The notes under the pieces: generated by a model
Seen by the model: the letters and a program-made list of their open reading frames with translations, nothing else
Told to the model about the DNA's origin: nothing
Databases searched by the model: none
Program-made: the position numbers and the translations under genes
Part shown: positions 36,452-64,000 of the stretch, one piece after another
How positions within the stretch are numbered: position 1 is the stretch's first letter
Layout of the letters: each line of letters starts with the position of its first letter
Virus record (IMG/VR): IMGVR_UViG_3300023184_000027
Coordinates: 124,001-188,000 of that record
DNA: 64,000 nt
Reading direction: 5' to 3' (one strand)

Positions 36452-39400
36452 TTAAAATGACCCAATATCACCAACAATATTCCACTCACATATGTTTGTC
36501 AAAATATATCGTGCATTACTTGCGGATACTGATGTGTATAAAAACCCGGGTACATCTAATCTAACACCAATTGCGACGTTATTGGTTAATCGTAATTGCG
36601 ACCATTTAATTAACAAATTATTATAATTTGTTGAGCTCATCGGTGTAGTGTTGGTAAACATATATATCATTGATTGAACTTTACTAATATTCCAGTTGGA
36701 TATGTCTTGACTAAAACTTGTATTGTAAGAAAACATTGACGACATATTATTCACATTACTTACATTCCAAGAGTTAAGGGGTTGATTGAATGATGAAGTG
36801 TTAAACATTGAGCTCATACTGGTAACATTACTTACATCCCAATTATTGATTGATTGATTGAATAAATTATTTTCCGTAAACATTCCAGTCATATTAGTGA
36901 CTTTACTAACATCCCAATTACCGATTGGTTGGTTAAAAGATGACCTTCTAAACATATATGACATATCAGTAACATTACTCACATTCCAATTACCGATTGG
37001 TTGATTGAATGGTGTGCCATGGAACATATACGACATATCGGTAACACCACTCACATTCCAAGATGAAATATTTTGGTTAAATGATGAATTATAGAACATT
37101 TGAGACATAGACACAACATTACTAACATCCCAATTATTAATGTTTGGTTGATTAAAAGATGTGTTATAACTAAACATACCACCCATATATCGGATACCAC
37201 TAATATTCCAAGACGATATATCTTGATTGAATTGTGTACCATCAAACATAGATGATAAACTAGTAATATATCTTAAATCCCAAGAAGTAATATTATTAAT
37301 TGTTCTTATACTATGACATTTATAAAATAATCCAGAAATTGTTATATAACCATAATTTTCCTCTTCATCATAATCGGTAAGGTTTAAAACCCCAATAACA
37401 GAATCTAACGTTAAATTAACACAATAGCTAAATTGTGCGTATGTTCCCCCTCTTAAAGAGAAATTTCCCCAATTTAATATAGAATATATTTTATAGTTAT
37501 TTGGGTAAATACCACTATCCTCATAATCCAAAGCTTCGTCAGAATTAAATTCCCATCCACGCACTAAACCAGTTACCTTAATAATATAATAACCTATCGA
37601 CGAGTAAGTGTGGGCTCTATTTGCATAACTATTCACAGAAGTTGTTCCATCACCCCAATCTATCGTACCACCATAATTTCCATCAACAATATATGGGAGA
37701 GTTATTGTATCGTTTATAACTAATGTTCTCCACCTTGATGTAAAGTCATTTCCATACGGATTTGGTGTTCTTGTTGGTGTCCGAGTCATTGTAGGGGTTT
37801 GAGTTATTGTAGGTGTTGGACTCATTGTTATTGTAGGTGTTGGTGTTGGTGTAGGGGCAACAACTAATGTTGTTAAACCATTTTGATATAAATAAACATC
37901 TGAAAATACAGAACTTCCATCAACATATCTTTGAAATATTTTTACATATATAAAACTTACGTAAGTTGAGTAGGTTTGGAACGTAGTCGTTGTTGTACAA
38001 GTCATATTATTAGTGTTGGCCCATGTAACATTATCAAACGAATAATATATTGACATAAATTGACAAGGTAATGTATTACCAATTACCATATAGACCTGAT
38101 ATACTGTTGTACTTCTTTGAATGATACTAGATATGGTTGGTACTAATTGAGGTCCACTCACTATTGGTGTTGTAGTTGGTGTTGGTGTAATTGTTGGTGT
38201 TGTGGTTTTTGTTGGTGTTGGTGTCGGAGTTACCGAGGGAAACGTGTATAGAACAACATTTGAATAATCACTATTAGTACTATTACTTGAACAATATTGG
38301 ATAAGTCTAACATATACATCTCCGGTTGTTTTAAACGAATTAAAACTAATTGGGGAAGAGCAATTTGTCTCCCCATAAGTTACACTAGCGTATCCCCAAC
38401 TAATGTTATCGTAAGAATATTGTACTATCACACTATTACAGGAAACTGGAGGAGTAAAATCAACTAATAATGTGCTGGATGAGAGATTACTAACACTTAT
38501 AATTGTTGGTGGAAGACACGATGTTTCCGATATCGGAGTAATTACCACCCCTCCCGAATATAGAGATATGTCAGAATAAATCACTGTTTGACTACCAACA
38601 TAAGTTTGACCAATTTTAATATAGACAATCCCTGTATAACTAAATGAGCCAAAGGGAAATAATGAACCACAATTATATACTCCGTAATAAGACCAATCAA
38701 CATTATTAAAAGAATAATATAGTATTATATTTAGACAAGCACTGGTATTCCCTGGTGTTACAAATATATTATATGTTGAACCACCTGTTCTAACAATGTT
38801 AGTTATTACAGGAAGATTTTGAGCTCCTAATCCCGGGGTTGGCGTTGGTGTAGGTGTTGGTGTGGGTGTTGGTGTGGGTAGAGAGGTTGTGAAAGCGTCA
38901 TTTGTATATAACGCAATATTTGAATAACTCTCAACACCATAAATTGATATTTGTTTAATTTTCACATATATAGTACCTGAACTATCCAAAGAGGTACTTA
39001 GACCAACGGGTGAACTACAACTATTTGATGTACCACTAAACCATGTTATATTATCTAACGAACCATACGATAAAACACTATTACAAGGGTAATTATTTGC
39101 TGTTGTAAAATAAATTAAATAATAATTTATGGATACTCTTTGTACATTATAGATTATTGGTGTCTCATAAATTATACCACTTGTTTGTGTTGGTGTTTGT
39201 GTTGGTGTTTTAGTGTTTGTCGGTGTTGGAGTTGAAGTTTTAGTGTTTGTTGGTGTTTGTGTAGGTGTTTTAGTCGGAGTTCTTGTTGGTGTTGATGTTA
39301 ATGTTGGTGTCGGGGTTAGAGTTGGTGTTTTTGTTAAAGTTTTAGTTGGTGTTGGTGTTTTAGTTGGGGTTTTAGTTGGGGTTGGAGTTTTAGTTGGGGT

Positions 39401-42400
39401 TGGAGATAATCCTGGTGTTGGTGTTAGTGTTGGTGTTGGAGTTGGATTTAAACCTTTTGTTGGTGTTGGTGTTTGTGTTGGTGTTTTAGTTGGTGTTGGT
39501 GTTTGTGTTGGTGTTTTAGTTGGCGTTTTAGTTGGCGTTGGAGTTTTAGTGTTTGTAGGTGTTGGTGTTGGTGTAACTGATATAGCATCGCCGGTTATTA
39601 TCCAACCAAAAGTATTTATAAGCACACCTCGTGGATTGTCCTCTATTATGGTATATGTTAATCCGACAGCACCTAACGGAACATTATATTTTTTTATTGG
39701 TAACACCGACCATTTTAATAATAAATTATCATAATTTGTTAAGCTCATAGTACTTCCGTTAAACATGTTCTCCATGTTAACGACTGATTTAATATCCCAA
39801 TTTGATATATCTTGATTAAATAGTGTTGAATAGAACATACCTCCCATATGAGTCACATTACTAACATTCCAATTACCAATTGGTTGGTCAAATTGACAAT
39901 CGTAGAACATACCACGCATTGTAGTTACCCCACTAACATTCCAATTTTCAAGACTTTCATTATATTTTGAATTACGAAACATATAACTCATGTTAACAAC
40001 ACTATTGACATTCCAATCACCTATTGGTTGATTAAACGATGAGACGTAAAACATATAAGACATATCTTTAACGTTACTAACATTCCAGGAGTTAAGAGAT
40101 TGATTAAATAATGATGTGTTAAACATATGTGACATATTGGTAACACCGCTAACATTCCAACTAGAGATATCTTGATTAAATTTTGAAGACGCGAACATAT
40201 ATATCATATTACGAACATTACCAACGTTCCAATTTGAAATATTTTCATCAAAAATTGTTGCGTTAAACATATAACTCATATTAATAACTTTTGATGTGTC
40301 CCAATTATTTAAATCTTGATTAAATGGTGTTGAATAAAACATGTATGTCATATTGGTAACATTACTAACATTCCAATTACCTATTGGTTGATTAAACGAT
40401 GCGTTATAAAACATAAATGACATATCGGTAACATGACTAACAACCCAATTTGATATATCTTCATTAAATATTGACCCTCTAAACATCCCTAACATAGTCG
40501 TAACACTACTAACATCCCAATTTGATATACCCTGATTAAACACAGACTCTCTAAACATACTTGTCATAGTCGTAACACTACTGACAACCCAATTACCGAT
40601 TGGTTGATTAAATGATGAAGAGTAAAACATAGATGACATATCTTTAACATTATTAACATTCCAATCACCGATTGGTTGGTTAAATCTTGATAAAGTAAAC
40701 ATATTTGACATATCAATAACGTTACTAACATCCCACATAGAAATATCTTGGTCAAATAACGATGAAGTAAACATACTTCTCATATCTGTTACATTACTAA
40801 CATCCCAAGTCGATATGTCTTGGTTAAATAATGAATCATAAAACATGGTTGCCATATTGGTAACACTACTAACGACCCAATTACCGATTGGTTGATTAAA
40901 TATTGATTTATAAAACATGTTTGACATATCGGTAACATTACTAACATCCCAATTTGATATATCTTGATTAAACGATGTGTTATAAAACATTCCTGTCATA
41001 TTTGTTATATTACTAACATCCCACAATTCTATATTATTAATTAAGGTTAAATTGGTACAATTAAAGAATAACCGGTATAAACTAGTTGTGCCTGTTAATG
41101 TTAATGCGTCGTTAACATTGTCTAAAACTAAATTAGTACACCCATAAAAACAAGAAGTACTATTCCCTAAATTTAAACAACCCCAATTAACTATTGATAA
41201 GAGCTTAGTTTTGTCAATATTATTCCCAAAAGACCACTTTACTACCACACCAGTTATTGTAATTGTATAATCACCACCATCAGCATAAATGTGTTTTCTG
41301 TTTGCATAACTATTCACAGAAGTCGTTCCATCCCCCCAATCTATCGTACCACTATATGTTCCTCCGACTACATAAGGTAATGTAACACTATTAAATGACG
41401 ATTTTAACCTCCATGTTGATATAAAATCTAGATTATGTGATATTACTATTGGGGTGGGTGTAGGTGTTGGTGTTAGAGTTTCTGTTGGTGTATTAGTTGG
41501 GGTTGAAGTGTTAGTTGGGGTTAAAGTCAAGGATAATCCTGATGTTGGTGTAGGTGTAGGTGATAATCCTGGCGTTGGAGTTGGAGTTGATGTCTCTGTA
41601 GGAGTTGGAGTGGGTGTCTCTGTAGGAGTGACTTCAGGAGTGACTAATGTATAGTCAATATATACAACCTCACCAAAAGTGAAATTGGTGTTTGTTTGAT
41701 TTACTAATGTAATCCCCGCTTCCGAAACAGTGTCTATAAAATAACCACTTTCGTCGCTAAGTATCTGAACTGAATCTGACCCACCACTAAACACCGCAAC
41801 AGATTCATTCTGACCAATTGTAAGTAAAAAATTATTACCAACCATATTACCAAAATAATCGGTTTGATTAACACCATTATTATCAATGTTATTAAAATAT
41901 ATTCCACCATTCTCTGATATATTATTAGGGTTATTATCTGCAATATGTAAACTATAATTAGCCAATAATGTTTCACCTGATAATGGAATATCAATATTAC
42001 TTATTAAAGAATACGGAATACCATCATTTATTGATGATATATCGAGAGAATTAATTAATAATATGGATTCGGAAAATTTATACTGTGTGTTCTCAATAAA
42101 ATAACCATCAATTGTTATATCACCTACAATACAATCGATGGATGTTATTGGTAAATTTATAACTCCAGGTCCATAAACAAACCAACCAACCTTTATATCA
42201 CATAAATTAGTGTTAGAAAATTTACCTATGTTTCCTGTTGGGTTTTGATTGGTATATGGCCCTAAAAATGATTGAGTTGGGGTTGCAGTTGGAGTTGGAG
42301 TTGGAGTATTCGTAGGTGTTTGGGTTGGTGTTTGGTCCGGTGTTTGGTTTGGAGTTACTCGTATTCTTTCATATTTTATATCTGAAGGTGGCCAACTAAT

Positions 42401-42595
42401 ACTCGTTAACACTCTTATACGACCTAAACTATTATTACTAGAAGAAAAAGTCCCATTAATGCACCAAATATTTTTTATTTGGTTTGGCATTAACTCCACC
42501 TGTCTTTTCCAAACAGAATCAGACAAATTTTGAAAAGTTATAGTTATTTTTTCATCACCATCATTTATTACCACTAGTCTTTGACCTATTGACAT
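36452..42595 (-). CDS. Giant modular surface/fibre protein: two BspA/DUF285 LRR arrays, PKD-like caps, four FN3-like modules, six Pro-Thr tracts
   Basis: Repeats of type [24 protein letters not shown]; IDWGDGT caps occur twice; long (TP)n tracts separate the domains. Confidence 0.85.
36645..37285 (-). repeat. BspA/DUF285 LRR array 2 (9 units of 24-26 aa)
   Basis: Counted from the translation (W.VS.V..MS.MF...FNQ units). Confidence 0.85.
39182..39575 (-). repeat. Longest Pro-Thr (mucin-like) tract
   Basis: [10 protein letters not shown]... encoded by degenerate ACACCA repeats. Confidence 0.9.
39750..41026 (-). repeat. BspA/DUF285 LRR array 1 (about 18 units of 24 aa / 72 nt)
   Basis: Counted from the translation. 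Confidence 0.88.
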
Positions 42596-42619: not shown

Positions 42620-43723
42620 TTATGTTGGTATCTCAACGGCAAAACAAATTTCACCATGTTCTCTTATTAATCTTTCCATATCAGCAAATGAAATATAGGA
42701 GTGTCCTGATTGACCCCAAGATTTTCCCCAACTATTTTTAATTCTGAAAAGTCTCGTCACCGTATTAACACCATTAATAACATAAGCGTGTCCTCCAGCA
42801 ATACGACCACTAATTCTAATTAAACCATTTCTATCTGGATAAAACATCCCATTATACCAATTAGTTCCAACAACAACAGGACCTAAATTTAAAACAGAAT
42901 TTATTAAACTTGTTAAATCAAAACCCCAATAATAGGAAGAAACTTTACGAACACTTTGTAAATATTTAACACCACCTCTAACTGATGTACCATCATAATT
43001 CTCACCAACCCATTCGTCAACTCTTTGAGCGTTTTCATAAATAACCCTAGGCGGTATTATCGGAGCAACCCCACTTTGAGGAACCGGACCATCTTCTAAC
43101 CAATGAGCCCAAGCATATCCAACACATTGGGGTGTATTACCTTGGTTACCCCACCATCCATTATCATCCCAGTATCTATTGGTAATTCTAACAGGTACGG
43201 CACTTAAAAGATTATTTATAGAATATTTATGGTCTCTTTCATCAGGTATATATTGTCTACCTAATTGATATGTTTTATTAATACTTTCTATAAGAACAAT
43301 TGGTTCGTTAACACAACAAGGAAATTCTGAAACATAACAACTATCATACACCAAATCATCGGCAATGAATGATTCCTGAACATTAATATTAAGTTTTTCT
43401 CTAATTGGTAAGATAAGTACACCATCAGAATTTCTTAACATAAACTCACCTTCATACCTACCAACACGATTGGTGTCTTTGGATGTGAATTGGTAATATA
43501 TGTAATATTCTGGTTCGGCATTGGGGTCTATTGAGGTTTTCTCAACAAATCCACCCGGTCTTGAAGTAATTTTTGGTATTCCCGTTTCTACATCTACCAT
43601 TGAAAAGAAAATTGACGATAACTCTATGGTTTTCATAAAATTATTGTAATCACTTCTTCCATCTTTTACGACTTGGAATTTTAAAACAGGTAAAGTCGAG
43701 TTTTTCTTAATAAAAAAATCCAT
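42620..43723 (-). CDS. BppU-like N-terminal domain fused to a papain-family (C1) cysteine peptidase
   Basis: N-terminal F.IKKNSTLPVLKF...YYQFT..DT...GRYEGEF...LP; C-terminal NQGNTPQCVGYA, GGHAY, IKNSWGKSWG with catalytic Q/C/H/N intact. Confidence 0.8.
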   Translation of the reverse strand: MDFFIKKNSTLPVLKFQVVKDGRSDYNNFMKTIELSSIFFSMVDVETGIPKITSRPGGFVEKTSIDPNAEPEYYIYYQFTSKDTNRVGRYEGEFMLRNSDGVLILPIREKLNINVQESFIADDLVYDSCYVSEFPCCVNEPIVLIESINKTYQLGRQYIPDERDHKYSINNLLSAVPVRITNRYWDDNGWWGNQGNTPQCVGYAWAHWLEDGPVPQSGVAPIIPPRVIYENAQRVDEWVGENYDGTSVRGGVKYLQSVRKVSSYYWGFDLTSLINSVLNLGPVVVGTNWYNGMFYPDRNGLIRISGRIAGGHAYVINGVNTVTRLFRIKNSWGKSWGQSGHSYISFADMERLIREHGEICFAVEIPT

Positions 43724-43769: not shown

Positions 43770-45446
43770 TTAACTCTCTTTTCTTAATGAACCATCGTAA
43801 TGTTCAAATCGGTCGTGTTCTGTTGGTGTTAACAATAATAATCCCGGATTGATTTTTCCTTTGACGGTTTCTTGATAACTATATGACATAAGGGTCTGTT
43901 CAAATGGATGCGCCCACTTTGTTTCTAAATAACATTTGTAATTGCCCTCTCTTGATAACACAATTGGCCAATTTGAAAGGTAGACTTCTCCTGTAACATA
44001 TGGTAACCCTTTGTGAATATGAATTTCTTTAAATTTTGTTTTTGGCGAATTGGGGTCTAAACCTTGAACAGGTAATTTAGGGTTGTTTGGCCAATGTTTT
44101 TGTCTAAAATCTTGGGGTACATTATACCAACTCCATTGTACACTATTATCACCAAAAAACTCACTAAAATTAAGTTTAAGAAAATCAAAATTTTCTTTAG
44201 CAAGTATATCTAATGATTTTTGATATAAGTTATCAACAAAACGGGGGAATCCATTTCTACAAACTTCACCTTTTTTAGGGTAAAACGCCATATCATCTTC
44301 AAACCACCAATAACAATCTAAATCAGTTTCGTCAAAATGTTCAGCAACAAATACTCTACCACCAACAATACCAATATTATCTTTTTTAATATGTTCAAAA
44401 CCATATTGCTCACATAGTTCAATATATCTCGGTGTTGTGGATAAATCTGTTGAGTTGTCTAATAAAAATTTCTTTGGTTTCTCCACAAAATCTTTATCGT
44501 AGTCCAACATAGATTGGATAAGAACTTCTAATTGTTTTGGTGAATTAAATGTAATGACATAAAGACCAACTTTTGATGTGTCTAAATTATTCACAATAAC
44601 ATCTTTAGATACTTCCGATTTAACCTCAACCGTCATATCTTTTAAATCTTCAAAAAACTTACCCATTAACCCATTACCATCTATTTCTGAATAAGTAATT
44701 AAGTTTGGGTACTTATATGTCATAATAGTAAATAATGATTCTTCAGTACCCATTAAACCATTTGAAAGGGTTTCATTCATTAATCCGTAATAAATGTTAT
44801 TAATTTCGGATATAACATCTTTTTTTCCACCAAAGAAACCTGCTCGAGCAACCATATTAACAGGTTTACCTGCTAAATCACATAACTCTTGATACTTGAA
44901 TCCGTGAATTTCACTATTAGTTTCATAAGGAAAACAAACAAAGTGGAAATTCTTAACTAATTTAGGTAATTTATCTAAAACTTTGTCATGAGTAAAGTAT
45001 CCAGGGTGGATTGTATTGGTTAATCCGGCATCAATCCAAAACATATATTCCGAATCAAACTTATCTAATATTTTCGCATCATGTAAAAGATAAACTTTTG
45101 ACATAACCAAAGGGTTATACATTTCTAATTTGGCTTGTGTTGAATCAGTTAACCAACCGACCTGATTATACCAATCAGGGTTTGTTCTTATCTTTTTAAT
45201 TTTATCGTAAAATTCGTTATTTTTAAACCAAGATAAATCTCTACGAACAAATTGAGTGTTTTCACTTCGTCGATTATTTAATACAAAATTCTCTAATTCT
45301 TCATCTCCAAAAATTATCATATTAACATCAACTTGTAATAATTGTTGAAACTTATCTAAATAATGTTGGAATGAACGGGACCACCCTTCTTGAAGGTCTC
45401 CTCTACCTATGTCCCATAATCCTGTAACTAATGTTATTTTACTCAT
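43770..45446 (-). CDS. Two-domain glycosyltransferase-like protein (HtrL/YibB-like N-domain + GT-A domain)
   Basis: ITLVTGLWDIGR...SKVYLL...FWIDAG...AGFFGG...TEES, then YVITFNSP...LLDNS...WWFEDD. Confidence 0.7.
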   Translation of the reverse strand: MSKITLVTGLWDIGRGDLQEGWSRSFQHYLDKFQQLLQVDVNMIIFGDEELENFVLNNRRSENTQFVRRDLSWFKNNEFYDKIKKIRTNPDWYNQVGWLTDSTQAKLEMYNPLVMSKVYLLHDAKILDKFDSEYMFWIDAGLTNTIHPGYFTHDKVLDKLPKLVKNFHFVCFPYETNSEIHGFKYQELCDLAGKPVNMVARAGFFGGKKDVISEINNIYYGLMNETLSNGLMGTEESLFTIMTYKYPNLITYSEIDGNGLMGKFFEDLKDMTVEVKSEVSKDVIVNNLDTSKVGLYVITFNSPKQLEVLIQSMLDYDKDFVEKPKKFLLDNSTDLSTTPRYIELCEQYGFEHIKKDNIGIVGGRVFVAEHFDETDLDCYWWFEDDMAFYPKKGEVCRNGFPRFVDNLYQKSLDILAKENFDFLKLNFSEFFGDNSVQWSWYNVPQDFRQKHWPNNPKLPVQGLDPNSPKTKFKEIHIHKGLPYVTGEVYLSNWPIVLSREGNYKCYLETKWAHPFEQTLMSYSYQETVKGKINPGLLLLTPTEHDRFEHYDGSLRKES

Positions 45447-45447
45447 A

Positions 45448-57200: not shown

Positions 57201-58675
57201 GGAGTGTAATAATAAATCCCATCACAATAAATCCCTGGTAATGCCGCAGAATTTGTTTTGTCTGACAATGTGTCGTTAATTTCTATATATGGTGAAGGTG
57301 TATATCTATGTAAAAATATCTTACAATCTTCTTTTGTGGTTATTGTTGTTTTTTTGAAAAGTTTAATAACCACCGTAAAAACTAAAATCACTAAACCAAC
57401 AATTGCTAATATTGTACCAATACCGGGGGCTACATTCATACCCAAAATACTTGCAACCGCAGTCTGACAACCACAAGCAGCCATAAGATGCCAACCAGCA
57501 CCTATGTTAATTATGTCAACAACTAACACTCCAATTCCAAGAGCTGCCCCTGTTGCTGCGAAATTAGCCCCACTTTTCCAAGTCATAATTCCTGACATTC
57601 CTTTAATACTTAATATTTTACGCCAATCAGTTTCACTAGAATCATAACCATTTACTAATCCCGACCCTAATTTAATTAACGCGTGTAAAGAACCTATGAT
57701 GGGATAATGTGACTTATTAGAATAACTATATAAAGTAAAAGTATTTTTACTTGAATCGTCGATAACATTATCATCATACCCAAGGTAATAACGATAACTC
57801 TCCGGATTAACTAAATCTGTTTGTGAAATAATTTCTTTAATTTTACCAATATCGCTCATTTTTGGAATAACACAAGCCGATGATGTGTCGGTATCACTAC
57901 TATAATATGACCTAGGTCCATCAGTTATTGTTGTTGTTTTTGTTTTAGAGAAAGCATTTTTTTTAACTGTTCTATAATATGTTGTCGAACCAAAAGCTCT
58001 ATCAAGTTCCCCACCAACTTTATATACATTACGACCGTACCCATAATAATAGGGTAAAGCCGGATTACTAAAAAATGGTGAAGAATAAACCAATGTGTTA
58101 GTGGTCCAACCAGTTATGTTAGTAAAAGAATATAGTTTTGTTCTTAATTTAGGGGTATTGAATGAGTCGTAAGGTGAATAAACGTGCATTCCAACATCAT
58201 ATGAATAAACATCATCAGGACATCCATATTTTATATATACTGACGATGGTTCGTCTTTAACTTTATATTGTCCTAACCCAATATTAATTAATAATGTCTC
58301 TGAAGTATTAGTTTGGTCTGAATTTACAATAATATGGTATGTTATTTCACCTATAACTCCGTCTTTCTTAAACACGTTCACATTCATTAAATCTGAATCT
58401 GCGGGAATATATAACCCATTTTTATTTGTCGAGACAGACGCTGGTGCCCCATTAGGGTGTACAAAAGACACACATCCGTAATCAACATTATCGGATGGGC
58501 GAATCTCAATTGTTATTACACCATGATTTGTGTTATCATGACTTAATTTTAAAGGGATTATTTTGGTTGCGAATCGTAAATCTCTAGGAAAATCAGAACT
58601 CTTTATGAATTTTGGTGATGACGAATCATAATCGGATTCGGTAAAAATGTATATTGGTGATGTATTTTGTAACAT
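54206..58675 (-). CDS. Large modular virion protein with hydrophobic hairpin, DUF5977-like module, Pro-Thr tract and C-terminal DLD...GGDN...E domain
   Basis: ITIPAGQVFSCISQLDANNKA (DUF5977-like); Gly/Ala-rich hydrophobic stretch; QDLDT...WGGDNTSSTGLESVYVD. Confidence 0.65.
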   Translation of the reverse strand: MLQNTSPIYIFTESDYDSSSPKFIKSSDFPRDLRFATKIIPLKLSHDNTNHGVITIEIRPSDNVDYGCVSFVHPNGAPASVSTNKNGLYIPADSDLMNVNVFKKDGVIGEITYHIIVNSDQTNTSETLLINIGLGQYKVKDEPSSVYIKYGCPDDVYSYDVGMHVYSPYDSFNTPKLRTKLYSFTNITGWTTNTLVYSSPFFSNPALPYYYGYGRNVYKVGGELDRAFGSTTYYRTVKKNAFSKTKTTTITDGPRSYYSSDTDTSSACVIPKMSDIGKIKEIISQTDLVNPESYRYYLGYDDNVIDDSSKNTFTLYSYSNKSHYPIIGSLHALIKLGSGLVNGYDSSETDWRKILSIKGMSGIMTWKSGANFAATGAALGIGVLVVDIINIGAGWHLMAACGCQTAVASILGMNVAPGIGTILAIVGLVILVFTVVIKLFKKTTITTKEDCKIFLHRYTPSPYIEINDTLSDKTNSAALPGIYCDGIYYYTPNNEGKITSKTQCSGIFYDYFQEGAKTITQSSQSSIMPDDPTLVTSWERLIILPYISGKPEPLCKNGINFTYFNTLLEQEIPDNSCDLEIFTSSKITIPAGQVFSCISQLDANNKAKALLDSSYEFAITHGNYSESIPDIYMGILDSKYTNISWVEFGTTKSPVVSESVRLFFDNRDTFGLTVGRNVYLDPSGCNKALKGFYTGAPYGGTIDGSPSRILPTQPIKTYQVESGKIIRINNETQTNSFYPSYISNWFLTDTSITSLTQTKLLMDDSRTFDPTTLESNDKCYQGLVKKTSSDYSSINDLLIFSGGSYVSAPEGFYLPLIDWINYTPFYYSKPDEIILNISENCDDKTSKGFYIVGVSKTTNANTPTHNEVSLSVDVKSGNKTKTYTATTSPTLSKTLIPYGTYFSSSDIISEITINSIITKSPLNNITYTIGSTYLCKNNNVIVIPCGEGFNQISNFGKGYYEMTTNIGTLTGITSLDFDSAELPDRFQIYWDNKLVCDSLFIGNKLFSDERQYYIDEIIKVKSLNRYIYENNGWRPHITPIINVSFDLRDIASDGDRFYGTSTPSPQIGVDKYYGINIADGNIRLKFNKTTSGVTTIRIVAISPIGGSNWSIDKLRCFTPPNIIPFKYRLKSDSTLSPDNRFGFVFNDTRDSISFSKCDEFKLLSPYTERTASLEIKSSTGGVPITLTIYKNDIFFSSVTSTTIENEWSKGGTLLSSLSNCENVTDYYTFNVDYTQPMTYVARVLISTKHITFYIDGKNLGVLNPVYNFIAQEIGVPTPTPTQTPTHTPTRTPKPTITPTLTPTPTKIPIILNADYVVFTYSFSQTSGQDLDTLTTLYVNGETTPYMESIPVGYCKQGSIRKSGKYGGPYLWWGGDNTSSTGLESVYVDIKKLKLNGSVTSIQLNCKADWYGQLKDGVVGIKMSVYSGGEMISNGNYGFKNTIEKGSLLCEYPFDSFDVYGKGCSNLSCVGLYTYNILTGEFSVDFNCLS

Positions 58676-58688: not shown

Positions 58689-60731
58689 TTAATCTCTTAT
58701 TAATCTTATTGATAACCCAGCCTTTTTATTCCAACCATCATTACTCGATACTTGTCTAACAGTAAGGGATGGTGAATCATAACTTATTTCAATTATACCG
58801 CCATGAGGACCAAAAGGTCCGACATCACTACCGTTTGATGACCACCAATAACCTATCCGATTTAAGTTGGTGAATGCGTTCTGACCATAGTTAAAACCTT
58901 TATAAGTCCACGCAACATTTCTGAAACCACCTGGTAAAGCCGTGAAACCAGTATCATTAGTAGCACCTGAATTAGGTGATAACCAGTGAGTTGTTCCTGT
59001 TTCTTTTAGTTTACCACCGGCGGTTCCACCTAAAGCATTTTTTAACATAGACCAGTCGTAGTCTGTGGGTATTTTCCAACCTGTTGGTGCTAACCCTCTT
59101 TTGTCGTTCACAGCGTACCAATTATATAAATATCCGTATGTATTACGATTGGACGGGTCATTGTTATAATAACAATAAGCACCTGTAGTTAATTTTGCCC
59201 AATCTGTTGCACTCGTTACAAGTGGGATTGGGTCTCCATTAATATAATGGTCAACCTCTAAATTTTTAGAAGACCAAATTTTGTTGTAATTTGTTCCTTT
59301 AATAATTGTAGTATCTGGAATACCGCTTGATTCTGAACCATTACATTCAAGAATATTAGAACTACAATATGATTTATCTATAATCAAACCGTTGAGTACT
59401 TCATATATAACAGAATACTGTGAATAATTACCATTAATTATTTGTGAATAATAACCATTTGGGGATATAGGTGGTGATAATTTTGTTTTAGTTTTTATGG
59501 TTGAATAATAATAGTCATAACCACCATTACAAATCAGTCCACTCGTGGATTTTTCAAATAGTGTCTCGGTGGATACTGTAAATGAAATGGTTTGCAAACC
59601 TTCGGATATATATTTTAATTGATAAACATCATCAAAATTATTAGAGTTTTTTGCAACCCTTAATATCTCAATATTGTAATTTCCAGTAATATTGTTAAAT
59701 GATTTGATTTTTTCACCGTTTTTATATAAATAAAAAGAATAACTCATGGTTGAAACTGATGGTTCACACTTAAGACTTATAATTTTTGTACCAAGCCACC
59801 TGTCACATCCGATACTACTACTATAATTGGAGACATATACTTCTTTAAAAGTTCCGCCGCCAGATGATACCATTGTGGATGTACTGAACTCCCAACCAAC
59901 TCGGATTGCCTTGTCTGGCGGTAAAAATATCATTATTGATTGTAATTTTGGGCTACCATACCAAAATGAATTAACTGTGAGACCATTATTAATATACAGA
60001 TTATCCCTATTATCAAAATACACTGTTTTTTGTTCGTCGCACGATGAACATAATTTATCCTTGTCAATATTAAAACAAAACTCAGAAGTTTGATATGAAC
60101 AATCCTTATAAAATAACGCATACAAAGTTGTTCCATCCTTTATCTGAGCATTAATTGACTCATCGCTTTCACTTCCCCGACGACCTGGTTCATTTACTCT
60201 CCATTTTTCATTTGTCCACCCATAAAACGACGAACCAAATGCGGGTATAGCAGTTATGTTAACCTTAGTATTTTCTTTACTAATTTTAGTTATTGTGGTT
60301 GCGGTAATTGTTCCATCGGTAACTAAACCGGAAGAACAAGGAGTTTGGGGTGAAGCAACGAAAACCGTTGTGGCGGTATATGGATTAACCTGAGTTATAA
60401 CAATTCCAACATCGCACGGAATTTCAACAGGTGCGGATATAGATGTAGTAGGACAAACCTTATCAAATAATGCATACAAAGTAACACCATCGTATATTTG
60501 TAACCTAAATGATTTATCCTGTTCCGCACCACGAATACCTGAATACCCACCTCTCCATTGTTCAGGTGTCCACCCATTAAAGTTTGAACCATTTTTAGTT
60601 ATTGCCGTTATCTGAACCCTTTGACCCTGTTTACCTGATATATATATTGTGGTACCAGTATTTCCTTGGGCAGCAATTTCACCATAAGCACAAGAAGATT
60701 GGAATAAAGCTTTGAGAACCATTGTTGCCAT
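58689..60731 (-). CDS. Fibre/surface protein: two InlB-B/Flg_new-like repeats + C-terminal FISUMP domain
   Basis: V.ITA...GS.F.GW...TLYALF occurs twice; intact FISUMP (WSSKNL...YGYLYNWYAV...LAPTGWKIPT...GFTALPGG...GYWWSS...GLSIRLIRD). Confidence 0.82.
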   Translation of the reverse strand: MATMVLKALFQSSCAYGEIAAQGNTGTTIYISGKQGQRVQITAITKNGSNFNGWTPEQWRGGYSGIRGAEQDKSFRLQIYDGVTLYALFDKVCPTTSISAPVEIPCDVGIVITQVNPYTATTVFVASPQTPCSSGLVTDGTITATTITKISKENTKVNITAIPAFGSSFYGWTNEKWRVNEPGRRGSESDESINAQIKDGTTLYALFYKDCSYQTSEFCFNIDKDKLCSSCDEQKTVYFDNRDNLYINNGLTVNSFWYGSPKLQSIMIFLPPDKAIRVGWEFSTSTMVSSGGGTFKEVYVSNYSSSIGCDRWLGTKIISLKCEPSVSTMSYSFYLYKNGEKIKSFNNITGNYNIEILRVAKNSNNFDDVYQLKYISEGLQTISFTVSTETLFEKSTSGLICNGGYDYYYSTIKTKTKLSPPISPNGYYSQIINGNYSQYSVIYEVLNGLIIDKSYCSSNILECNGSESSGIPDTTIIKGTNYNKIWSSKNLEVDHYINGDPIPLVTSATDWAKLTTGAYCYYNNDPSNRNTYGYLYNWYAVNDKRGLAPTGWKIPTDYDWSMLKNALGGTAGGKLKETGTTHWLSPNSGATNDTGFTALPGGFRNVAWTYKGFNYGQNAFTNLNRIGYWWSSNGSDVGPFGPHGGIIEISYDSPSLTVRQVSSNDGWNKKAGLSIRLIRD

Positions 60732-60802: not shown

Positions 60803-61921
60803 TTAACATTGTACCGCAATATGAGTTCTAGTAAAAAGATAAGAATCTAAAACACTATTATCTGTTGCGTCTTTAATATCAAGACGTATATTACTTGTAT
60901 ATGTGTTAGTTCCCGTTCCCATATATCTAAATGCCGCAATTCCAAAATTATATTTTTTACTATTTCCAGCAGATATTGAATTATTTGAAAGATTACTAAA
61001 CACTTTAGTAACTCCTGTCCCACCAGGAAGGGTGGTAGTATATGCTGCTCCTCCCGTAAATATAGATGTAATATCCACTTTTATATTTATTGACGTATTA
61101 ACCGTAACGGTAACACTATTCCAACATTCCGGGAAATTTTCAAAATCGTTAACAACTGTTAAAGATGTTAAAAGATGTGTTGGTGTAGGTGTTTTTGTCG
61201 GTGTAGGTGTTTTTGTAGGAGTTAATGACTGTGTGGGGGTTATTGTTGGGGTTAATGTTGGAGTATTTGTTGGGGTTTCCATCGGAGACGCCCCTGGCGT
61301 TCCAGTAACAGTTGATGTTACAGTCGTTGTTGGTGTTTGAGTTGGAGTTGTCGTTGGTGTTTGAGTTAATGTCATCGTAGGTGTTATTGTTGGTGTAGAT
61401 GTGTTAGTGATTGTTGGTGTTTGAGTATTTGTTGGTGTTGGAGATATTTCGATTGTTTGACAACTATTATTAACACAAACATCTGTAATTGAAATGTTCA
61501 CATTTTCATCCGCAAATGGCAATCTACCACAAACATAAAATGTTGTTGATTGAGGGATTATACCAGTAAACATAGTTCCATTACATTGAGTATATCCAAA
61601 ATTTAAATTACCTATCCCAACATTAATAAACGCAATACAATTACATGAAATGTTTGTTGGAGTTATTGTTGGTGTTTGTGTTAATGTTGGTGTTGGTGTA
61701 GGGGTAAAACAATTAATATAATTCATTGTTTCACATCCTTTACTATCAGTTATAACTACTAATAATTGGTTAACTCCATTTAGTTGTGTTGGAGGTGTTA
61801 TTGTTATAGGTGCTGAAGTCACACCACTAATTACAAAATAACAATAAGTGTATGTCATATCACATACTGTGATAATAAAGGGTGGATGCCCCACTAAACT
61901 AGTGATTTCTATTGACTGCAT
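60803..61921 (-). CDS. Cys-rich protein with long Pro-Thr (mucin-like) tracts
   Basis: Two (TP)n tracts separate small Cys-containing beta domains; TATTTAT motif just upstream. Confidence 0.75.
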   Translation of the reverse strand: MQSIEITSLVGHPPFIITVCDMTYTYCYFVISGVTSAPITITPPTQLNGVNQLLVVITDSKGCETMNYINCFTPTPTPTLTQTPTITPTNISCNCIAFINVGIGNLNFGYTQCNGTMFTGIIPQSTTFYVCGRLPFADENVNISITDVCVNNSCQTIEISPTPTNTQTPTITNTSTPTITPTMTLTQTPTTTPTQTPTTTVTSTVTGTPGASPMETPTNTPTLTPTITPTQSLTPTKTPTPTKTPTPTHLLTSLTVVNDFENFPECWNSVTVTVNTSINIKVDITSIFTGGAAYTTTLPGGTGVTKVFSNLSNNSISAGNSKKYNFGIAAFRYMGTGTNTYTSNIRLDIKDATDNSVLDSYLFTRTHIAVQC

Positions 61922-61965
61922 ATTGATAAATATAATTACAACTCATTTTAATTAAATTGTTTTTC

Positions 61966-61993: not shown

Positions 61994-62000
61994 TATGTCT

Positions 62001-64000
62001 ATGAAAAAAGTTTTAATTATAACACCCCATTTAAGTACAGGTGGTGCACCTCAAGTCACCCTTAATAAAATAAAGTTATTAAAAGACGATTACATTATTA
62101 AATGTGTCGAATATTCTTTGGTTGCTTGGAACTATGTAGTCCAACGAAATCAAATTGAAAATATGTTATTAGATAATTTCCACCCATTAGGAGATAATAA
62201 ATCTGAACTTATTAATATTTTAAAAGATTTTAATCCTGATGTTGTTAGTATGGAAGAATTTCCTGAATTCTTTATGGATGATGAAATAACAAAAGAAATA
62301 TATAAGGAAGACCGTAGATACACTATTTTTGAAACTACCCACGATTCTAGCTTTCCTGTAACATCAAAGAGATACTTTCCAGATAAGTTTATATTTGTAA
62401 GCGCGTTTAACGCGTTCAGATATTCTATCTTTGATATTCCATATGAAATAATTGAATATCCTGTGGATGTTAAAATAAAAAATCAAAAAGAGAATCAGGA
62501 GAAATTAGATTTAAGTTCTGATTGGAAACATGTTGTTAATGTTGGTTTATTCACCTCAAGAAAAAATCAAAAATATCTTTTTGAGATTGCCGAATACTTA
62601 AAGAATTATAAAATTAAATTTCATTTTATTGGGAATCAAGCGGACAACTTTAAAGATTATTGGGAACCTTTAATAACTAACAAACCTAAAAACGCCATTA
62701 TTTGGGGTGAGAGAAATGATGTGGATAGTTTTATTCAAGCATCCGATGTATTTTTCTTTTCATCAAAAGGTGACCGAAATAATAAGGAGTTAAACCCTAT
62801 CGCAATTAAAGAAGCTTTAGAGTATAGAATACCTATGATGATGTATAATTTGGAAGTTTATTGTGATAAGTATAGTAACGAAGAATTTATAACATTTTTA
62901 ACAGGTGATTTAAAAATAGATTCGGAAAATTTATTAAATATTTTGGGTGTTGAGATTGATAAAGAATTAACATCTCATATTAATGATGATGAAGTCATTA
63001 TCATTAGTACTTATCCCGACACTATTAAACGCAAAAATCTAACGATTGAATGTATAGAAAGTTTTAAAAAATTAGGTAGAAAAATTATATTAGTTTCTCA
63101 TTATCCGGTACCAAATGAGATACAAGAAATGGCAGACTATTATATTTTTGATTCAAATAATTTATTGATTCCTCATTCATATTACACCCATTTTTATCAT
63201 AATACGGACCAATATAATGCTCAAATAAATATCAATGGGTTGTCAAAATCAAATCAATCATTAGCTGCTCATATTAATTTTATGAATGGTGCAAAATTCG
63301 CTAAAGTTATTGGAGCGACAAAATTTATGATAATAACTTATGATGTTACCTTAAACGAATTAGACATTCCTTTAATTGAAGAATATTTTAATAAATTAAC
63401 AAATTGGAATTGTTGTTTATCTTACATGGATAATGGTGTTGAAACAACCTCTATGGTGTTTAAAACTAGTTATTTTCTAAATACTTTTTTAGATATTAAT
63501 GATGAAGAAACATTTAATAATCATTGTTCTGAATTAAAGTGTCATAATTTTTTAGAAAATTACTATATGAAAATTTTAGAAGGTAAAGAAAACCTTTGGA
63601 TTGAACATAATAATAAAAAAACAATTTTACCAAATTCAGGTTTGGGGGTATCATCTAATTCTGAATATTATTCAATTTTACCTGTTAATGACACCAAAAA
63701 TAGGTGGGTGTTTTATTTTTACACATATAATATTGACAATCGCAGATTGGAATTATCAATTAATAAATCGGGTAAAAACATCTTTAACGATTCAATCATT
63801 ATCTCTGAACATACATTAATTGCTGGTTCAAATAGGGCAAAGTATTTTAAGTACATTGATTATAATGGAAACCCTATGGAGATTACCATTTCATTTTATG
63901 ATGAAGATAATTTACATAAAACAGAAACTTATGAATTAAACAATACAACAATTCACCAATATTATGACAATGGGTTCTTTAATGAAATAAATAAAACAGA
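62001..64000 (+). CDS. Multidomain glycosyltransferase: GT4 (GT-B) domain + second GT-A-like domain (runs off window end)
   Basis: Not in the ORF track. MKKVLIITPHLSTGGAPQ...NVGLFTSRKNQ...WGERNDVDSFIQASDVF...ELNPIAIKEAL, then IIISTYP...IILVSHYP...YYIFD; frame stays open to 64000. Alternative ATG at 61995. Confidence 0.85.
   Translation, partial: MKKVLIITPHLSTGGAPQVTLNKIKLLKDDYIIKCVEYSLVAWNYVVQRNQIENMLLDNFHPLGDNKSELINILKDFNPDVVSMEEFPEFFMDDEITKEIYKEDRRYTIFETTHDSSFPVTSKRYFPDKFIFVSAFNAFRYSIFDIPYEIIEYPVDVKIKNQKENQEKLDLSSDWKHVVNVGLFTSRKNQKYLFEIAEYLKNYKIKFHFIGNQADNFKDYWEPLITNKPKNAIIWGERNDVDSFIQASDVFFFSSKGDRNNKELNPIAIKEALEYRIPMMMYNLEVYCDKYSNEEFITFLTGDLKIDSENLLNILGVEIDKELTSHINDDEVIIISTYPDTIKRKNLTIECIESFKKLGRKIILVSHYPVPNEIQEMADYYIFDSNNLLIPHSYYTHFYHNTDQYNAQININGLSKSNQSLAAHINFMNGAKFAKVIGATKFMIITYDVTLNELDIPLIEEYFNKLTNWNCCLSYMDNGVETTSMVFKTSYFLNTFLDINDEETFNNHCSELKCHNFLENYYMKILEGKENLWIEHNNKKTILPNSGLGVSSNSEYYSILPVNDTKNRWVFYFYTYNIDNRRLELSINKSGKNIFNDSIIISEHTLIAGSNRAKYFKYIDYNGNPMEITISFYDEDNLHKTETYELNNTTIHQYYDNGFFNEINKT

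What the first reader, a model, noticed from the sequence alone, without database searches (positions are those of the whole stretch)
36452..64000. Candidate phage-encoded mucin-type O-glycosylation system: GT60-led glycan pathway embedded among Pro-Thr-rich fibre proteins
Seen: four large modular proteins (36452-42595, 50636-54166, 54206-58675, 60803-61921) carry about eleven (Thr-Pro)n tracts between adhesin-like domains. They surround a seven-gene operon (GT60, GT10-like, GT25, FkbM MTase, second MTase, GT-A, HtrL-like+GT-A), and a GT4 fusion is transcribed divergently at 62001. Established: GT60 includes the Dictyostelium and Trypanosoma polypeptide alpha-GlcNAc transferases that start O-glycans on Thr of Pro/Thr-rich mucin-like repeats; GT10 adds alpha-1,3-Fuc; GT25 extends chains; FkbM-type enzymes often O-methylate sugars. 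Inference: the phage primes the PT linkers with GlcNAc, then extends and methyl-caps them. This would give stiff, protease-resistant, glycan-coated stalks that display binding domains, a eukaryote-like 'mucin coat' on a phage, with enzyme and substrate encoded side by side.
Basis: partly seen in the sequence, partly recalled or inferred. Interest (0 to 1): 0.9.

Follow-up and report, generated by a model that had tools for sequence, protein, structure and literature searches.

The report
Jumbo-phage glycosylation island beside Thr-Pro fibres
An abundant uncultured freshwater jumbo phage keeps a mucin-type-like protein sugar-transferase and a swappable set of sugar-modifying enzymes right next to fibre-like proteins with Thr-Pro linkers, so it probably sugar-coats its own particle, though nobody has shown this.

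Summary
Eleven Thr-Pro linker regions (about 483 residues, 240 Thr) occur in exactly four of 39 ORFs. They flank a seven-gene enzyme array. GT60, GT10, GT25, FkbM and HtrL pass Pfam cut-offs. The "GT-A" calls are supported by motifs, profiles and folds. The "second MTase" is unconfirmed.

New here:
- The GT60 has the invariant DxH plus C-terminal His. Its 40 best PDB fold matches are all mucin-type polypeptide GalNAc-transferases.
- GT60 and a two-GT-A-domain HtrL enzyme are conserved bookends in hundreds of related contigs. Between them lies a hypervariable cassette: 69 protein clusters in 67 loci, none membrane-bound.
- The ORF just upstream of GT60 has a TP tract in 35 of 37 dereplicated loci.
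- The same enzyme pair occurs in Xanthomonas phage XacN1, whose virions stain as glycoprotein.
- Bacterial GT60 genes lie near T6SS VgrG spikes with (TP)n tails and in peptide-modification clusters.

Best reading (about 0.5): cytoplasmic O-glycosylation of the TP linkers of phage surface proteins, primed by GT60 and tailored by the variable cassette. The substrate, the sugar and the virion location are all inferred. This is a new variant of phage virion glycosylation.

The parts
60803..61921 (-). 372-aa protein of small Cys-rich domains joined by TP linkers (aa 73-90 and 161-249). Candidate glycan acceptor.
   Evidence: Thr 23.4%, Pro 8.9%. About the first 41% of its length matches a segment of the ORFs upstream of GT60 in most related loci. 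Those ORFs vary in length from 170 to over 3,300 aa.
58689..60731 (-). 680-aa fibre/adhesin-like protein without TP tracts.
   Evidence: Pfam Fib_succ_major at E 1.1e-36 and Flg_new_2 (InlB B-repeat) at E 7e-9. No TP tract.
54206..58675 (-). 1489-aa modular protein with one TP linker region (aa 1276-1306) and an internal pair of strongly hydrophobic helices (aa ~370-446).
   Evidence: Only a sub-threshold DUF5977 hit.
50636..54166 (-). 1176-aa modular protein with two TP linker regions (aa 319-368 and 447-498) and a C-terminal Fib_succ_major domain. It lies directly upstream of GT60.
   Evidence: In 35 of 37 dereplicated related loci the ORF in this position carries a TP tract.
49288..50535 (-). 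GT60-family GT-A glycosyltransferase. Proposed priming polypeptide O-HexNAc (probably alpha-GlcNAc) transferase and conserved 5' bookend of the glycan island.
   Evidence: PF11397 at 237.6 bits. D92-S-H94 and H229 are invariant. AF2 pLDDT 94.8. The 40 best PDB fold hits are all GT27 ppGalNAc-Ts. No TM segment or signal peptide. 432 IMG/VR contigs encode a relative, and the 80 kept are at least 78% identical.
48387..49283 (-). GT10-like (fucosyltransferase family) enzyme in the variable cassette.
   Evidence: PF00852 at 30.6 bits against a cut-off of 23.9. Close orthologues only in L014 and L037.
47620..48390 (-). GT25-family glycosyltransferase in the variable cassette.
   Evidence: PF01755 at 34.6 bits against a cut-off of 24. 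GT25 is the commonest family among cassette clusters, 7 of 69.
46917..47600 (-). FkbM-type methyltransferase in the variable cassette.
   Evidence: PF05050 at 37 bits against a cut-off of 22.7. FkbM occurs in 6 of 69 cassette clusters.
46216..46911 (-). 231-aa protein, possibly a class I methyltransferase (unconfirmed), in the variable cassette.
   Evidence: Only a sub-threshold Spermine_synth hit at E 0.017. phrog_24975, function unknown. Conserved VVEIG and LFLDGWD motifs. No PDB sequence hit.
45448..46206 (-). 252-aa GT-A glycosyltransferase with a DDD motif, in the variable cassette.
   Evidence: No Pfam hit. D103-D104-D105 invariant. The family profile hits heparosan synthase B (E 4e-5) and KfiA (E 1.6e-3).
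43770..45446 (-). 558-aa enzyme with two GT-A-like domains (HtrL_YibB N-terminal half; C-terminal half with an EDD motif). Conserved 3' bookend of the island and proposed core-extending, possibly bifunctional, transferase.
   Evidence: PF09612 at E 3e-20. E383-D384-D385 invariant. AF2 pLDDT 87. Best fold hits are Mimivirus R699, LH3, COLGALT1, LARGE1, K4CP and PmHS2. Found in most related loci, in XacN1-type phages and next to GT60 in many bacterial loci.
42620..43723 (-). 367-aa protein with a C-terminal papain-like (C1) peptidase domain. In most relatives the gene at this position also carries TP tracts.
   Evidence: PF00112 at E 1.6e-5. phrog_16701 'peptidase' at E 2.6e-55. The sequence shows papain-like Q..C, GGHA and NSWG motifs. 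TP tract in 27 of 43 dereplicated loci.
36452..42595 (-). 2047-aa protein with eight DUF285 (BspA-like) repeats separated by six TP linker regions, the longest at aa 1008-1139. Candidate glycan acceptor.
   Evidence: PF03382 at E 3e-228 with 8 stretches. Tracts listed. 32 TPTP tetrapeptides against a shuffle mean of 0.16.
62001..64000 (+). Divergently transcribed GT4 (GT-B) fusion protein, cut off by the window end. First gene of a probable second glycan-enzyme arm.
   Evidence: PF00534 at E 1.3e-10. No stop codon in 666 codons. In relative L001 the full protein is 905 aa and is followed by an MTase-GT2 fusion and another MTase.

Best explanation
A phage-encoded, wholly cytoplasmic protein O-glycosylation system. 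During late infection the soluble GT60 enzyme puts a first HexNAc, most likely alpha-GlcNAc from host UDP-GlcNAc, on Thr (or Ser) of the Thr-Pro linkers. These linkers belong to large modular fibre/adhesin-like proteins encoded on both sides of the enzyme genes. The conserved two-GT-A-domain HtrL enzyme then builds a common core or repeat. A lineage-specific cassette tailors the chain; here it is GT10-like, GT25, a KfiA-like GT-A, FkbM and a possible second MTase. The result would be stiff, glycan-clad, protease-resistant spacers whose glycan type differs between closely related phages. Shown: the gene content, family memberships, folds, motifs, solubility, synteny and cassette variability. 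Inferred: the acceptor, the donor sugars, the order of steps, virion location and benefit.
For: 1) GT60 identity. PF11397 scores 237.6 bits. The DxH motif and a C-terminal His are invariant in 39-42 homologues; DxH replacing DxD is the stated hallmark of GT27 and GT60 (PMC7185993). The model has pLDDT 94.8, and ranks 1-40 in the PDB are all mucin-type polypeptide GalNAc-transferases. According to the reviews read here, characterised GT60 enzymes are polypeptide alpha-GlcNAc-transferases that start mucin-type O-glycans in protists (PMC8724618).
2) Synteny. In 46 dereplicated related loci the ORF just upstream of GT60 has a TP tract in 35 of 37. The ORF just after the HtrL enzyme has one in 27 of 43, the cassette enzymes in 0 of 174 and other ORFs in 44 of 173. 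In the window, TP tracts occur only in four ORFs around the enzymes.
3) Co-direction. Fourteen same-strand genes have gaps of 100 bp or less and no intergenic terminator-like site.
4) Solubility. No TM segment or signal peptide was found in any enzyme here or in 227 cassette proteins from 67 loci. The TP proteins also lack signal peptides. Enzymes and candidate substrates therefore share the cytoplasm, and no flippase, polymerase or lipid-carrier transferase is present.
5) Cassette content. It consists of GTs, sugar methyl-, carbamoyl- and acetyl-transferases and a few nucleotide-sugar enzymes.
6) Cultured relatives. XacN1, Xoo-sp13 and RAS14 carry the same GT60 ... HtrL-GT arrangement with PT-tract proteins nearby. 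XacN1 virions show at least two Schiff-positive bands.
7) Bacterial contexts. GT60 homologues lie 4-6 kb from T6SS VgrG in seven Burkholderiales loci, and five of those VgrGs have TP-rich tracts. One lies in a radical-SAM/C39-ABC peptide cluster and one next to a PqqD-like protein. These are peptide or protein contexts.
8) Fold of the second enzyme. The HtrL enzyme's best fold matches include enzymes that extend protein-linked O-glycans: Mimivirus R699, LH3, COLGALT1 and LARGE1 (PMC9546862).
Against: - There is no biochemical or proteomic evidence for this phage.
- The synteny counts are not phylogenetically independent. No GT60-negative relative that keeps TP tracts could be found, so co-occurrence could not really be tested within the clade.
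- The TP proteins match no annotated tail-fibre family. A PolB/helicase block separates them from the sheath/baseplate module, so virion location is inferred from domain content only.
- PT linkers are common without any glycosylation.
- Many bacterial GT60 loci show no PT protein within 10 kb.
- GT25 and HtrL_YibB are Pfam families described from LPS-core gene clusters.
- The XacN1 glycoprotein bands were never identified. XacN1 is only a distant relative: just four window proteins match that region.
Confidence: 0.5

Rival explanations
1. The island glycosylates virion proteins, but not specifically the TP linkers. Targets could be capsid, sheath or tube subunits, as in mycobacteriophages. The TP-rich genes would simply be neighbouring fibre genes.
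For: Known phage virion glycosylation sits on the C-termini of capsid and tail-tube subunits (Freeman et al. 2023, as summarised in PMC12619734). The XacN1 glycoprotein bands are unidentified. Many bacterial GT60 loci lack a nearby PT protein.
Against: The flanking of the enzyme genes by TP-tract genes is very consistent. The GT60/GT27 clade acts on Ser/Thr/Pro-rich stretches. VgrG proteins with (TP)n tails lie near bacterial GT60 genes.
Confidence: 0.17
2. The enzymes remodel a host envelope glycolipid, such as the LOS/LPS core at the inner face of the membrane, during infection. This could block superinfection or stop progeny sticking to debris.
For: GT25 and HtrL_YibB are Pfam families named from LPS-core clusters, and GT10 and GT4 are common in LPS loci. 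Sequential soluble GTs also build LPS cores, so the lack of TM proteins does not exclude this reading (established knowledge).
Against: GT60, the conserved lead enzyme, has no described lipid or LPS acceptor in the literature read. The bacterial GT60 contexts examined are T6SS and peptide clusters, not waa or O-antigen loci. No ligase, flippase or lipid-carrier enzyme occurs in 227 cassette proteins. The same pair occurs in phages of unrelated hosts, Xanthomonadaceae and probable Bacteroidota, whose LPS cores differ.
Confidence: 0.1
3. The enzymes hypermodify phage DNA with glycans to evade restriction.
For: Phage GT arrays can build diverse glycans on DNA (Pyle et al. 2024, cited in PMC12619734). 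The island lies next to PolB and replication genes.
Against: No base hydroxymethylase-like gene lies in the 64 kb window among the proteins scanned. XacN1, which has the same GT60/HtrL pair, has DNA that BssHII, NaeI and SpeI cut into the expected map. The GT60 fold is closest to polypeptide transferases. Bacterial homologues sit in chromosomal T6SS and RiPP-like loci.
Confidence: 0.05
4. The TP tracts are plain unglycosylated spacers. The island makes a free or secreted oligosaccharide, or decorates a small peptide, and is unrelated to the fibres.
For: PT linkers work as spacers in many bacterial proteins without known glycans (established knowledge). Some bacterial GT60 genes lie in RiPP-like peptide clusters.
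Against: No precursor-peptide, exporter or RRE gene lies in the phage island. The conserved adjacency to TP genes would then be unexplained.
Confidence: 0.08

Closest known systems
CAZy GT60 polypeptide alpha-GlcNAc-transferases of protists (Dictyostelium and Trypanosoma cruzi mucin-type initiation; Skp1 hydroxyproline GlcNAc-transferase)
   Same: Pfam PF11397 membership. DxH motif plus C-terminal His. GT-A fold next to GT27. No ricin-like lectin domain. Candidate acceptors rich in Thr, Pro and Lys, like protist mucin repeats.
   Different: It is encoded by a phage. It is soluble, with no membrane anchor, so it resembles the cytoplasmic Skp1 enzyme more than the Golgi enzymes. It has an extra beta-rich C-terminal domain of about 90 aa. 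Its activity is untested. No prolyl hydroxylase was found in the window, so a Hyp linkage is not favoured, though the rest of the genome was not seen.
Animal mucin-type O-glycosylation (GT27 polypeptide GalNAc-transferases)
   Same: These are the best structural matches: PDB ranks 1-40, E down to 7e-11. The logic is the same: a priming HexNAc transferase on dense Thr/Pro repeats, followed by variable extension.
   Different: About 12-18% sequence identity. No lectin domain. Cytoplasmic rather than Golgi. The donor is probably GlcNAc rather than GalNAc.
Mycobacteriophage virion glycosylation (Che8-type; Freeman et al. 2023, as cited in PMC12619734)
   Same: Phage-encoded glycosyltransferases that decorate the phage's own particle.
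   Different: In those phages the glycans are on the C-termini of capsid and tail-tube subunits. Here the candidate acceptors are internal TP linkers of fibre-like proteins, the lead enzyme is GT60, and the cassette is hypervariable. Nothing has been shown experimentally here.
Xanthomonas jumbo phage XacN1 (ORF334 to ORF330) and relatives Xoo-sp13, CM1 and RAS14
   Same: GT60 orthologue (45-48% identity) and HtrL two-domain GT (39-44%) bracket a small cassette (carbamoyltransferase plus one or two ORFs). PT-tract proteins lie nearby. Virions are Schiff-positive, and the authors suggested that ORF328 and ORF334 are responsible.
   Different: A different phage lineage: only four window proteins match the XacN1 region. 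It has fewer PT tracts and a different cassette. The authors drew no link to PT tracts or to GT60.
O-antigen or capsule gene clusters (variable cassette between conserved flanking genes)
   Same: A hypervariable set of GTs and sugar-tailoring enzymes lies between two conserved flanks. That arrangement would suit cassette exchange by recombination, although no exchange event was demonstrated.
   Different: No Wzx, Wzy, WaaL or initiating phosphoglycosyl transferase, and no membrane protein at all. The flanks are themselves the conserved first and core enzymes.
Giant-virus glycosylation machineries (Mimivirus R699 collagen glucosyltransferase; chlorovirus capsid glycosylation)
   Same: A virus-encoded, host-independent cytoplasmic protein glycosylation system. 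R699 is the best fold match of the HtrL two-domain enzyme.
   Different: Those are viruses of eukaryotes with other acceptors (collagen hydroxylysine, capsid Asn). The global TM-score is only 0.25-0.3, so the resemblance is at the level of tandem GT-A architecture.

Membership tests
CAZy GT60 / Pfam PF11397 | Sequence match above the family's curated threshold | tested here: met
   237.6 bits against a cut-off of 21, E 3.5e-70. Also phrog_24687 at E 2.8e-168.
CAZy GT60 / Pfam PF11397 | DxH motif replacing DxD, plus a C-terminal His for metal binding (shared with GT27; PMC7185993) | tested here: met
   D92-S93-H94 and H229 are invariant in alignments A2 (39 sequences) and A3 (42 sequences), with identity to the window protein down to 35-36%. 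Assigning H229 as the metal-binding C-His is an inference from position.
CAZy GT60 / Pfam PF11397 | GT-A fold closest to GT27, without the ricin-type lectin domain (PMC8724618) | tested here: met
   PDB ranks 1-40 are all GT27 ppGalNAc-Ts. No ricin Pfam hit. The C-terminal part is a beta-rich domain of about 90 aa.
CAZy GT60 / Pfam PF11397 | Transfers alpha-GlcNAc from UDP-GlcNAc to Thr, Ser or Hyp of a polypeptide | not testable with these tools
   Needs an enzyme assay or glycoproteomics.
Mucin-type O-glycosylation system | Dense Ser/Thr/Pro-rich repeat domains as acceptors | tested here: met
   Eleven TP linker regions, about 483 residues with 240 Thr. That they are acceptors is not shown.
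Mucin-type O-glycosylation system | Takes place in the secretory pathway (Golgi lumen) with membrane-anchored enzymes | tested here: not met
   No TM segment or signal peptide in any enzyme. The system would be cytoplasmic.
Phage virion glycosylation (mycobacteriophage type) | Glycans shown on virion proteins and dependent on phage glycosyltransferases | not testable with these tools
   The only indirect evidence is Schiff-positive virion bands in XacN1, which carries the orthologous pair.
Und-PP-linked polysaccharide locus (O-antigen or capsule) | Initiating phosphoglycosyl transferase, flippase or ABC exporter, and polymerase or ligase (all membrane proteins) | tested here: not met
   None of 227 cassette proteins (69 clusters, 67 loci) and no window enzyme has a TM-like segment. 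No such Pfam family is among the 25 cassette families listed of 31 found.
Phage DNA glycosylation system (T4 type and relatives) | A base-hydroxymethylating enzyme plus DNA glycosyltransferases; DNA resistant to many restriction enzymes | tested here: inconclusive
   No hydroxymethylase-like Pfam hit among the window proteins scanned, but the rest of the roughly 208 kb genome was not seen. XacN1 DNA is cut by three enzymes.
Bifunctional dual GT-A transferases (LARGE1, K4CP, PmHS2, LH3/R699 type) | Two GT-A domains in one chain, each with an acidic metal-binding motif | tested here: inconclusive
   The model shows two Rossmann-like domains, and the best fold hits are of this kind. The C-terminal domain has an invariant EDD. 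No catalytic motif of the N-terminal HtrL domain was identified. Global TM-score is only about 0.25.

The most novel reading that the evidence does not exclude
Phage particles of a very abundant freshwater jumbo-phage clade carry strain-variable, mucin-like glycan coats ('phage glycotypes'). A conserved GT60 primer and a dual GT-A core enzyme build them, with an exchangeable tailoring cassette in between. The same GT60 module also glycosylates (TP)n tails of T6SS VgrG spikes and peptide natural products in bacteria. Together this would be a general prokaryotic cytoplasmic counterpart of mucin-type O-glycosylation that acts on contractile-injection hardware.
Probability: 0.25. Interest if true: 0.85.

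Novelty: new variant of a known kind. Interest (0 to 1): 0.7.

Why it matters
Glycosylated phage particles have been shown in very few cases. If this reading holds, three things follow.

- **Scale.** Virion glycosylation would extend to a clade seen in hundreds of IMG/VR contigs and thousands of metagenomic proteins.
- **A predictive rule.** A GT60 gene next to Thr-Pro linkers would give an enzyme-plus-substrate signature for finding glycosylated phage proteins.
- **Diversifying surface glycans.** The hypervariable cassette between conserved bookends would suggest that phage surface glycans diversify much as bacterial O-antigens do. That bears on adsorption, resistance to proteases and grazers, and recognition of phages by other organisms.

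It would also give prokaryotic GT60 enzymes, which have no assigned function, a testable role. The link to T6SS spikes with (TP)n tails is a further lead. The soluble one-pot enzyme set could be useful for making defined O-glycopeptides in laboratory E. coli.

Tried and rejected
- **PDB sequence search with GT60:** no hit, so a fold search on a model was used instead.
- **Literature search 'GT60 + phage':** nothing relevant.
- **Close-homologue search:** swamped by near-identical proteins. The 50%-cluster search showed diversity but gives no context.
- **tRNA scan:** none found.
- **Sigma-70 promoter scan:** counts no different from shuffles. All terminator-like sites are intragenic, so this gave no operon evidence beyond gene spacing. 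The host is probably Bacteroidota, which that scan does not cover.
- **GT60-negative relatives via PolB:** No clear case was found. Two loci (L213, L216) show neither the island nor TP tracts upstream of PolB, but the view is limited to the flank.
- **TP-tract counts in high-GC bacterial loci:** noisy because of spurious ORFs, so I used only cases confirmed by Pfam or tblastn.
- **Hydroxyproline-linked glycosylation (Skp1 or extensin type):** considered and not favoured, because no prolyl hydroxylase domain was found in the window. The rest of the genome was not seen.
- **The 'second MTase' call:** could not be confirmed.
- **Freeman et al. 2023:** could not be read. It is cited only through PMC12619734.

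Full report
**What the window is.** The 64 kb window has about 31% G+C and is densely coding. It encodes a 1266-aa tail-sheath protein, a baseplate hub, a family B DNA polymerase, a helicase, a gp32-like protein, a RecA-like protein and a 5'-3' exonuclease. It is therefore part of a myovirus. GT60 and PolB match IMG/VR contig IMGVR_UViG_3300023184_000027 (207,952 bp) at 100%. Related contigs reach 322 kb, so this is a jumbo phage. No cultured phage is close: the best PolB hits are 23-30% identical.

**Checking the observation.**
- Thr-Pro tracts occur in those four ORFs and in none of the other 35. Merged, they form 11 linker regions, about 483 residues with 240 Thr.
- TPTP tetrapeptides number 32, 14, 2 and 4, against shuffle means of 0.04-0.16. 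The excess is clear for the first two proteins. It is marginal on this measure for the other two, whose shuffle maxima reach 2 and 3.
- GT60 (237.6 bits), GT10-like, GT25, FkbM, HtrL_YibB and the divergent GT4 all exceed the Pfam curated cut-offs.
- The 252-aa protein has no Pfam hit. It does have an invariant DDD motif, and its family profile hits heparosan synthase B (E 4e-5) and KfiA.
- The C-terminal half of the HtrL protein has an invariant EDD. The model shows two GT-A-like domains.
- The 'second methyltransferase' remains unconfirmed.
- The domains between the linkers are of adhesin type. DUF285 x8, Fib_succ_major and an InlB B-repeat pass the cut-offs. PKD and DUF5977 are sub-threshold.

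**The lead enzyme.**
- In alignments of 39 and 42 homologues, with identity to the window protein down to 35-36%, D92-S-H94 and H229 are invariant.
- GT60 enzymes are the protist polypeptide alpha-GlcNAc-transferases that start mucin-type glycans, and they lack the ricin-like domain of GT27 (PMC8724618).
- An AlphaFold2 model (pLDDT 94.8) has ranks 1-40 in the PDB filled by mucin-type polypeptide GalNAc-transferases: T1, T2, T4, T7, T10, T12, PGANT9 and Toxoplasma T3.
- In the viral structure library, its best matches are 'Glycosyltransferase, GlcNAc' proteins of uncultured tailed phages, Megaviridae and Pandoravirus.
- The enzyme has no membrane anchor.

**The island across relatives.**
- GT60 relatives were confirmed in 432 IMG/VR contigs; the 80 best kept are at least 78% identical. 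More than 7,400 metagenomic proteins also match.
- In 80 fetched loci the layout is: TP-rich ORF, GT60, variable genes, HtrL two-domain GT, C1-peptidase-like ORF (often with TP tracts), then PolB.
- Between GT60 and the HtrL gene, 67 loci hold one to eight genes (0.85-7 kb) that fall into 69 protein clusters.
- The cluster representatives are GT25, GT10, GT2, GT34, GT11, GT7 and PLOD-type GTs; FkbM and other methyltransferases; a carbamoyltransferase; GNAT acetyltransferases; a DegT aminotransferase; a nucleotidyltransferase; and an epimerase.
- None of the 227 cassette proteins has a TM-like segment.
- The island therefore resembles an O-antigen locus in variability. It lacks every membrane step, and its conserved flanks are themselves enzymes.
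- After dereplication to 46 loci, the ORF just upstream of GT60 has a TP tract in 35 of 37. The ORF just downstream of the HtrL gene has one in 27 of 43, cassette ORFs in 0 of 174 and other ORFs in 44 of 173. The few 'TP-negative' loci still have a short T/P-rich or Gly-Ser/Thr repeat stretch in the upstream ORF.
- These counts are not independent in the phylogenetic sense.
- Upstream TP proteins carry varied binding modules, including a DUF5122 propeller, a ConA-like lectin domain and a P-domain. Most contain a segment matching the N-terminal 41% of the window's 372-aa protein.
- In relative L001 the divergent arm continues with an MTase-GT2 fusion and another MTase. A second enzyme arm therefore probably lies just beyond the window end.

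**Cultured relatives.**
- Only four phage records hold a GT60 homologue: Xanthomonas phages XacN1 and Xoo-sp13, and Stenotrophomonas phages CM1 and RAS14, all jumbo phages.
- In the three examined (XacN1, Xoo-sp13, RAS14), GT60 is followed by a carbamoyltransferase, one or two ORFs and an HtrL two-domain orthologue (39-44% identity).
- PT-tract proteins lie nearby: XacN1 ORF350, and the giant ORF325 family that follows the baseplate wedge genes (XacN1 supplement).
- The XacN1 paper reports at least two Schiff-positive virion bands and suggests that ORF328 and ORF334 are responsible. ORF334 is the GT60 orthologue. The bands were not identified.
- XacN1 DNA is cut by BssHII, NaeI and SpeI into the expected map. 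This argues against bulk DNA glycosylation there.

**Bacterial homologues.**
- The closest, at about 70% identity, are low-GC contigs binned with Saprospiraceae and other Bacteroidota. One is a 230 kb contig and is probably a phage. This is a weak host hint.
- The HtrL two-domain gene lies beside or near GT60 in about 30 of the 80 loci, for example directly after it in Gemmatimonadota. The pair is therefore an older module that phages split with a cassette.
- In seven Burkholderiales loci, GT60 lies 4-6 kb from a T6SS VgrG. Five of those VgrGs carry TP-rich tracts; in Paraburkholderia ferrariae this is a C-terminal tail of nearly 50 TP repeats. In that locus GT60 sits among T6SS genes (TssM/IcmF-like and ImpA-like).
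- In Sphingobacterium zeae, GT60 sits with a radical-SAM enzyme and a C39-peptidase ABC exporter.
- In a Gemmatimonadaceae genome a PqqD-like protein lies just upstream.
- The contexts I examined are peptide or protein contexts, not polysaccharide loci. Many bacterial loci show no PT protein within 10 kb.

**The second conserved enzyme.** Its model (pLDDT 87) has two GT-A-like domains. The best fold matches are Mimivirus R699, LH3, COLGALT1, LARGE1, chondroitin polymerase K4CP and heparosan synthase 2. R699 is a collagen galactosylhydroxylysyl glucosyltransferase (PMC9546862). Global TM-scores are low, about 0.25, so this supports the architecture and not a specific activity.

**Verdict.** It needs three corrections.
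- Only GT60 and the HtrL two-domain enzyme are conserved. The other five genes are one of many cassettes.
- The system is cytoplasmic and has bacterial relatives. It is mucin-like in enzyme family and acceptor type, not in cell biology.
- Virion location of the TP proteins and every chemical step are inferred.

The rivals cannot be excluded by computation: other virion targets, host LOS, DNA, or a free glycan or peptide product. Phage-encoded virion glycosylation is known, and XacN1's authors already guessed a role for the orthologue. The GT60/TP-linker pairing, the bookended hypervariable cassette and the T6SS link are new. I rate it a new variant of a known kind, interest 0.7.

Noticed in passing
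window 30496-32034 (+): A 512-aa phage protein has complete Fe/Mn superoxide dismutase domains (Sod_Fe_N at E 1.6e-23, Sod_Fe_C at E 2.5e-39) followed by about 280 aa with no match. It lies between the helicase and a head-tail-adaptor-like gene.
   Followed up: no
window 54206-58675 (-), aa ~370-446: Two very hydrophobic, Gly-rich helices (Kyte-Doolittle score up to 3.0) sit inside an otherwise soluble 1489-aa fibre-like protein. They could be a membrane-inserting or pore-forming segment.
   Followed up: no
L150 9971-17564; also L107, L127, L136, L143, L154, L157: In seven Burkholderiales loci a GT60 homologue lies 4-6 kb from a T6SS VgrG gene. In five of them the VgrG carries a TP-rich tract. 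In Paraburkholderia ferrariae (L150) this is a C-terminal tail of nearly 50 TP repeats, and IcmF- and ImpA-type T6SS genes are adjacent.
   Followed up: partly
L124 3505-11311 (Sphingobacterium zeae); L098 9230-11269 (Gemmatimonadaceae): Here GT60 homologues sit in peptide-modification contexts. One is with a radical-SAM enzyme and a C39-peptidase ABC exporter. The other is just after a PqqD-like (RiPP recognition) protein and is followed directly by an HtrL two-domain GT.
   Followed up: partly
L132, L138, L161 (Acidobacteriaceae), ~12340-13480 (-): TP/AP-tract ORFs lie 1-2 kb from GT60 in three genomes. In L138, tandem ferritin-like (PF13668) genes occupy this position.
   Followed up: no
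window 42620-43723 (-): A papain-like C1 peptidase domain with what look like intact Cys, His and Asn catalytic motifs lies directly after the glycan island. It is conserved in nearly all relatives, usually behind a TP-tract N-terminal part. XacN1 also encodes a C1 peptidase.
   Followed up: partly
window 26567-27794 (-): Three tandem small genes (144, 134 and 129 aa) all start MKILITE. The first matches phrog_586, function unknown. They lie just upstream of the sheath module.
   Followed up: no
L084, L085, L087 (Saprospiraceae MAG contigs); L086, L089, L092, L093: The closest GT60/HtrL pairs outside IMG/VR (57-70% GT60 identity) are contigs binned with Bacteroidota MAGs, most of them low in G+C. 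One is a 230 kb contig and is probably a jumbo phage. This weakly suggests a Saprospiraceae or other Bacteroidota host.
   Followed up: no
L146 9992-13457 (Luminiphilus); P0122-P0127: GT60 domains are sometimes duplicated. Luminiphilus has two GT60 genes about 1 kb apart. Metagenomic proteins of 1,300-2,500 aa carry three or four GT60-like stretches.
   Followed up: no
L058 2-2404: In one relative the ORF upstream of GT60 has long collagen-like (G-S/T-S)n repeats instead of TP tracts.
   Followed up: no
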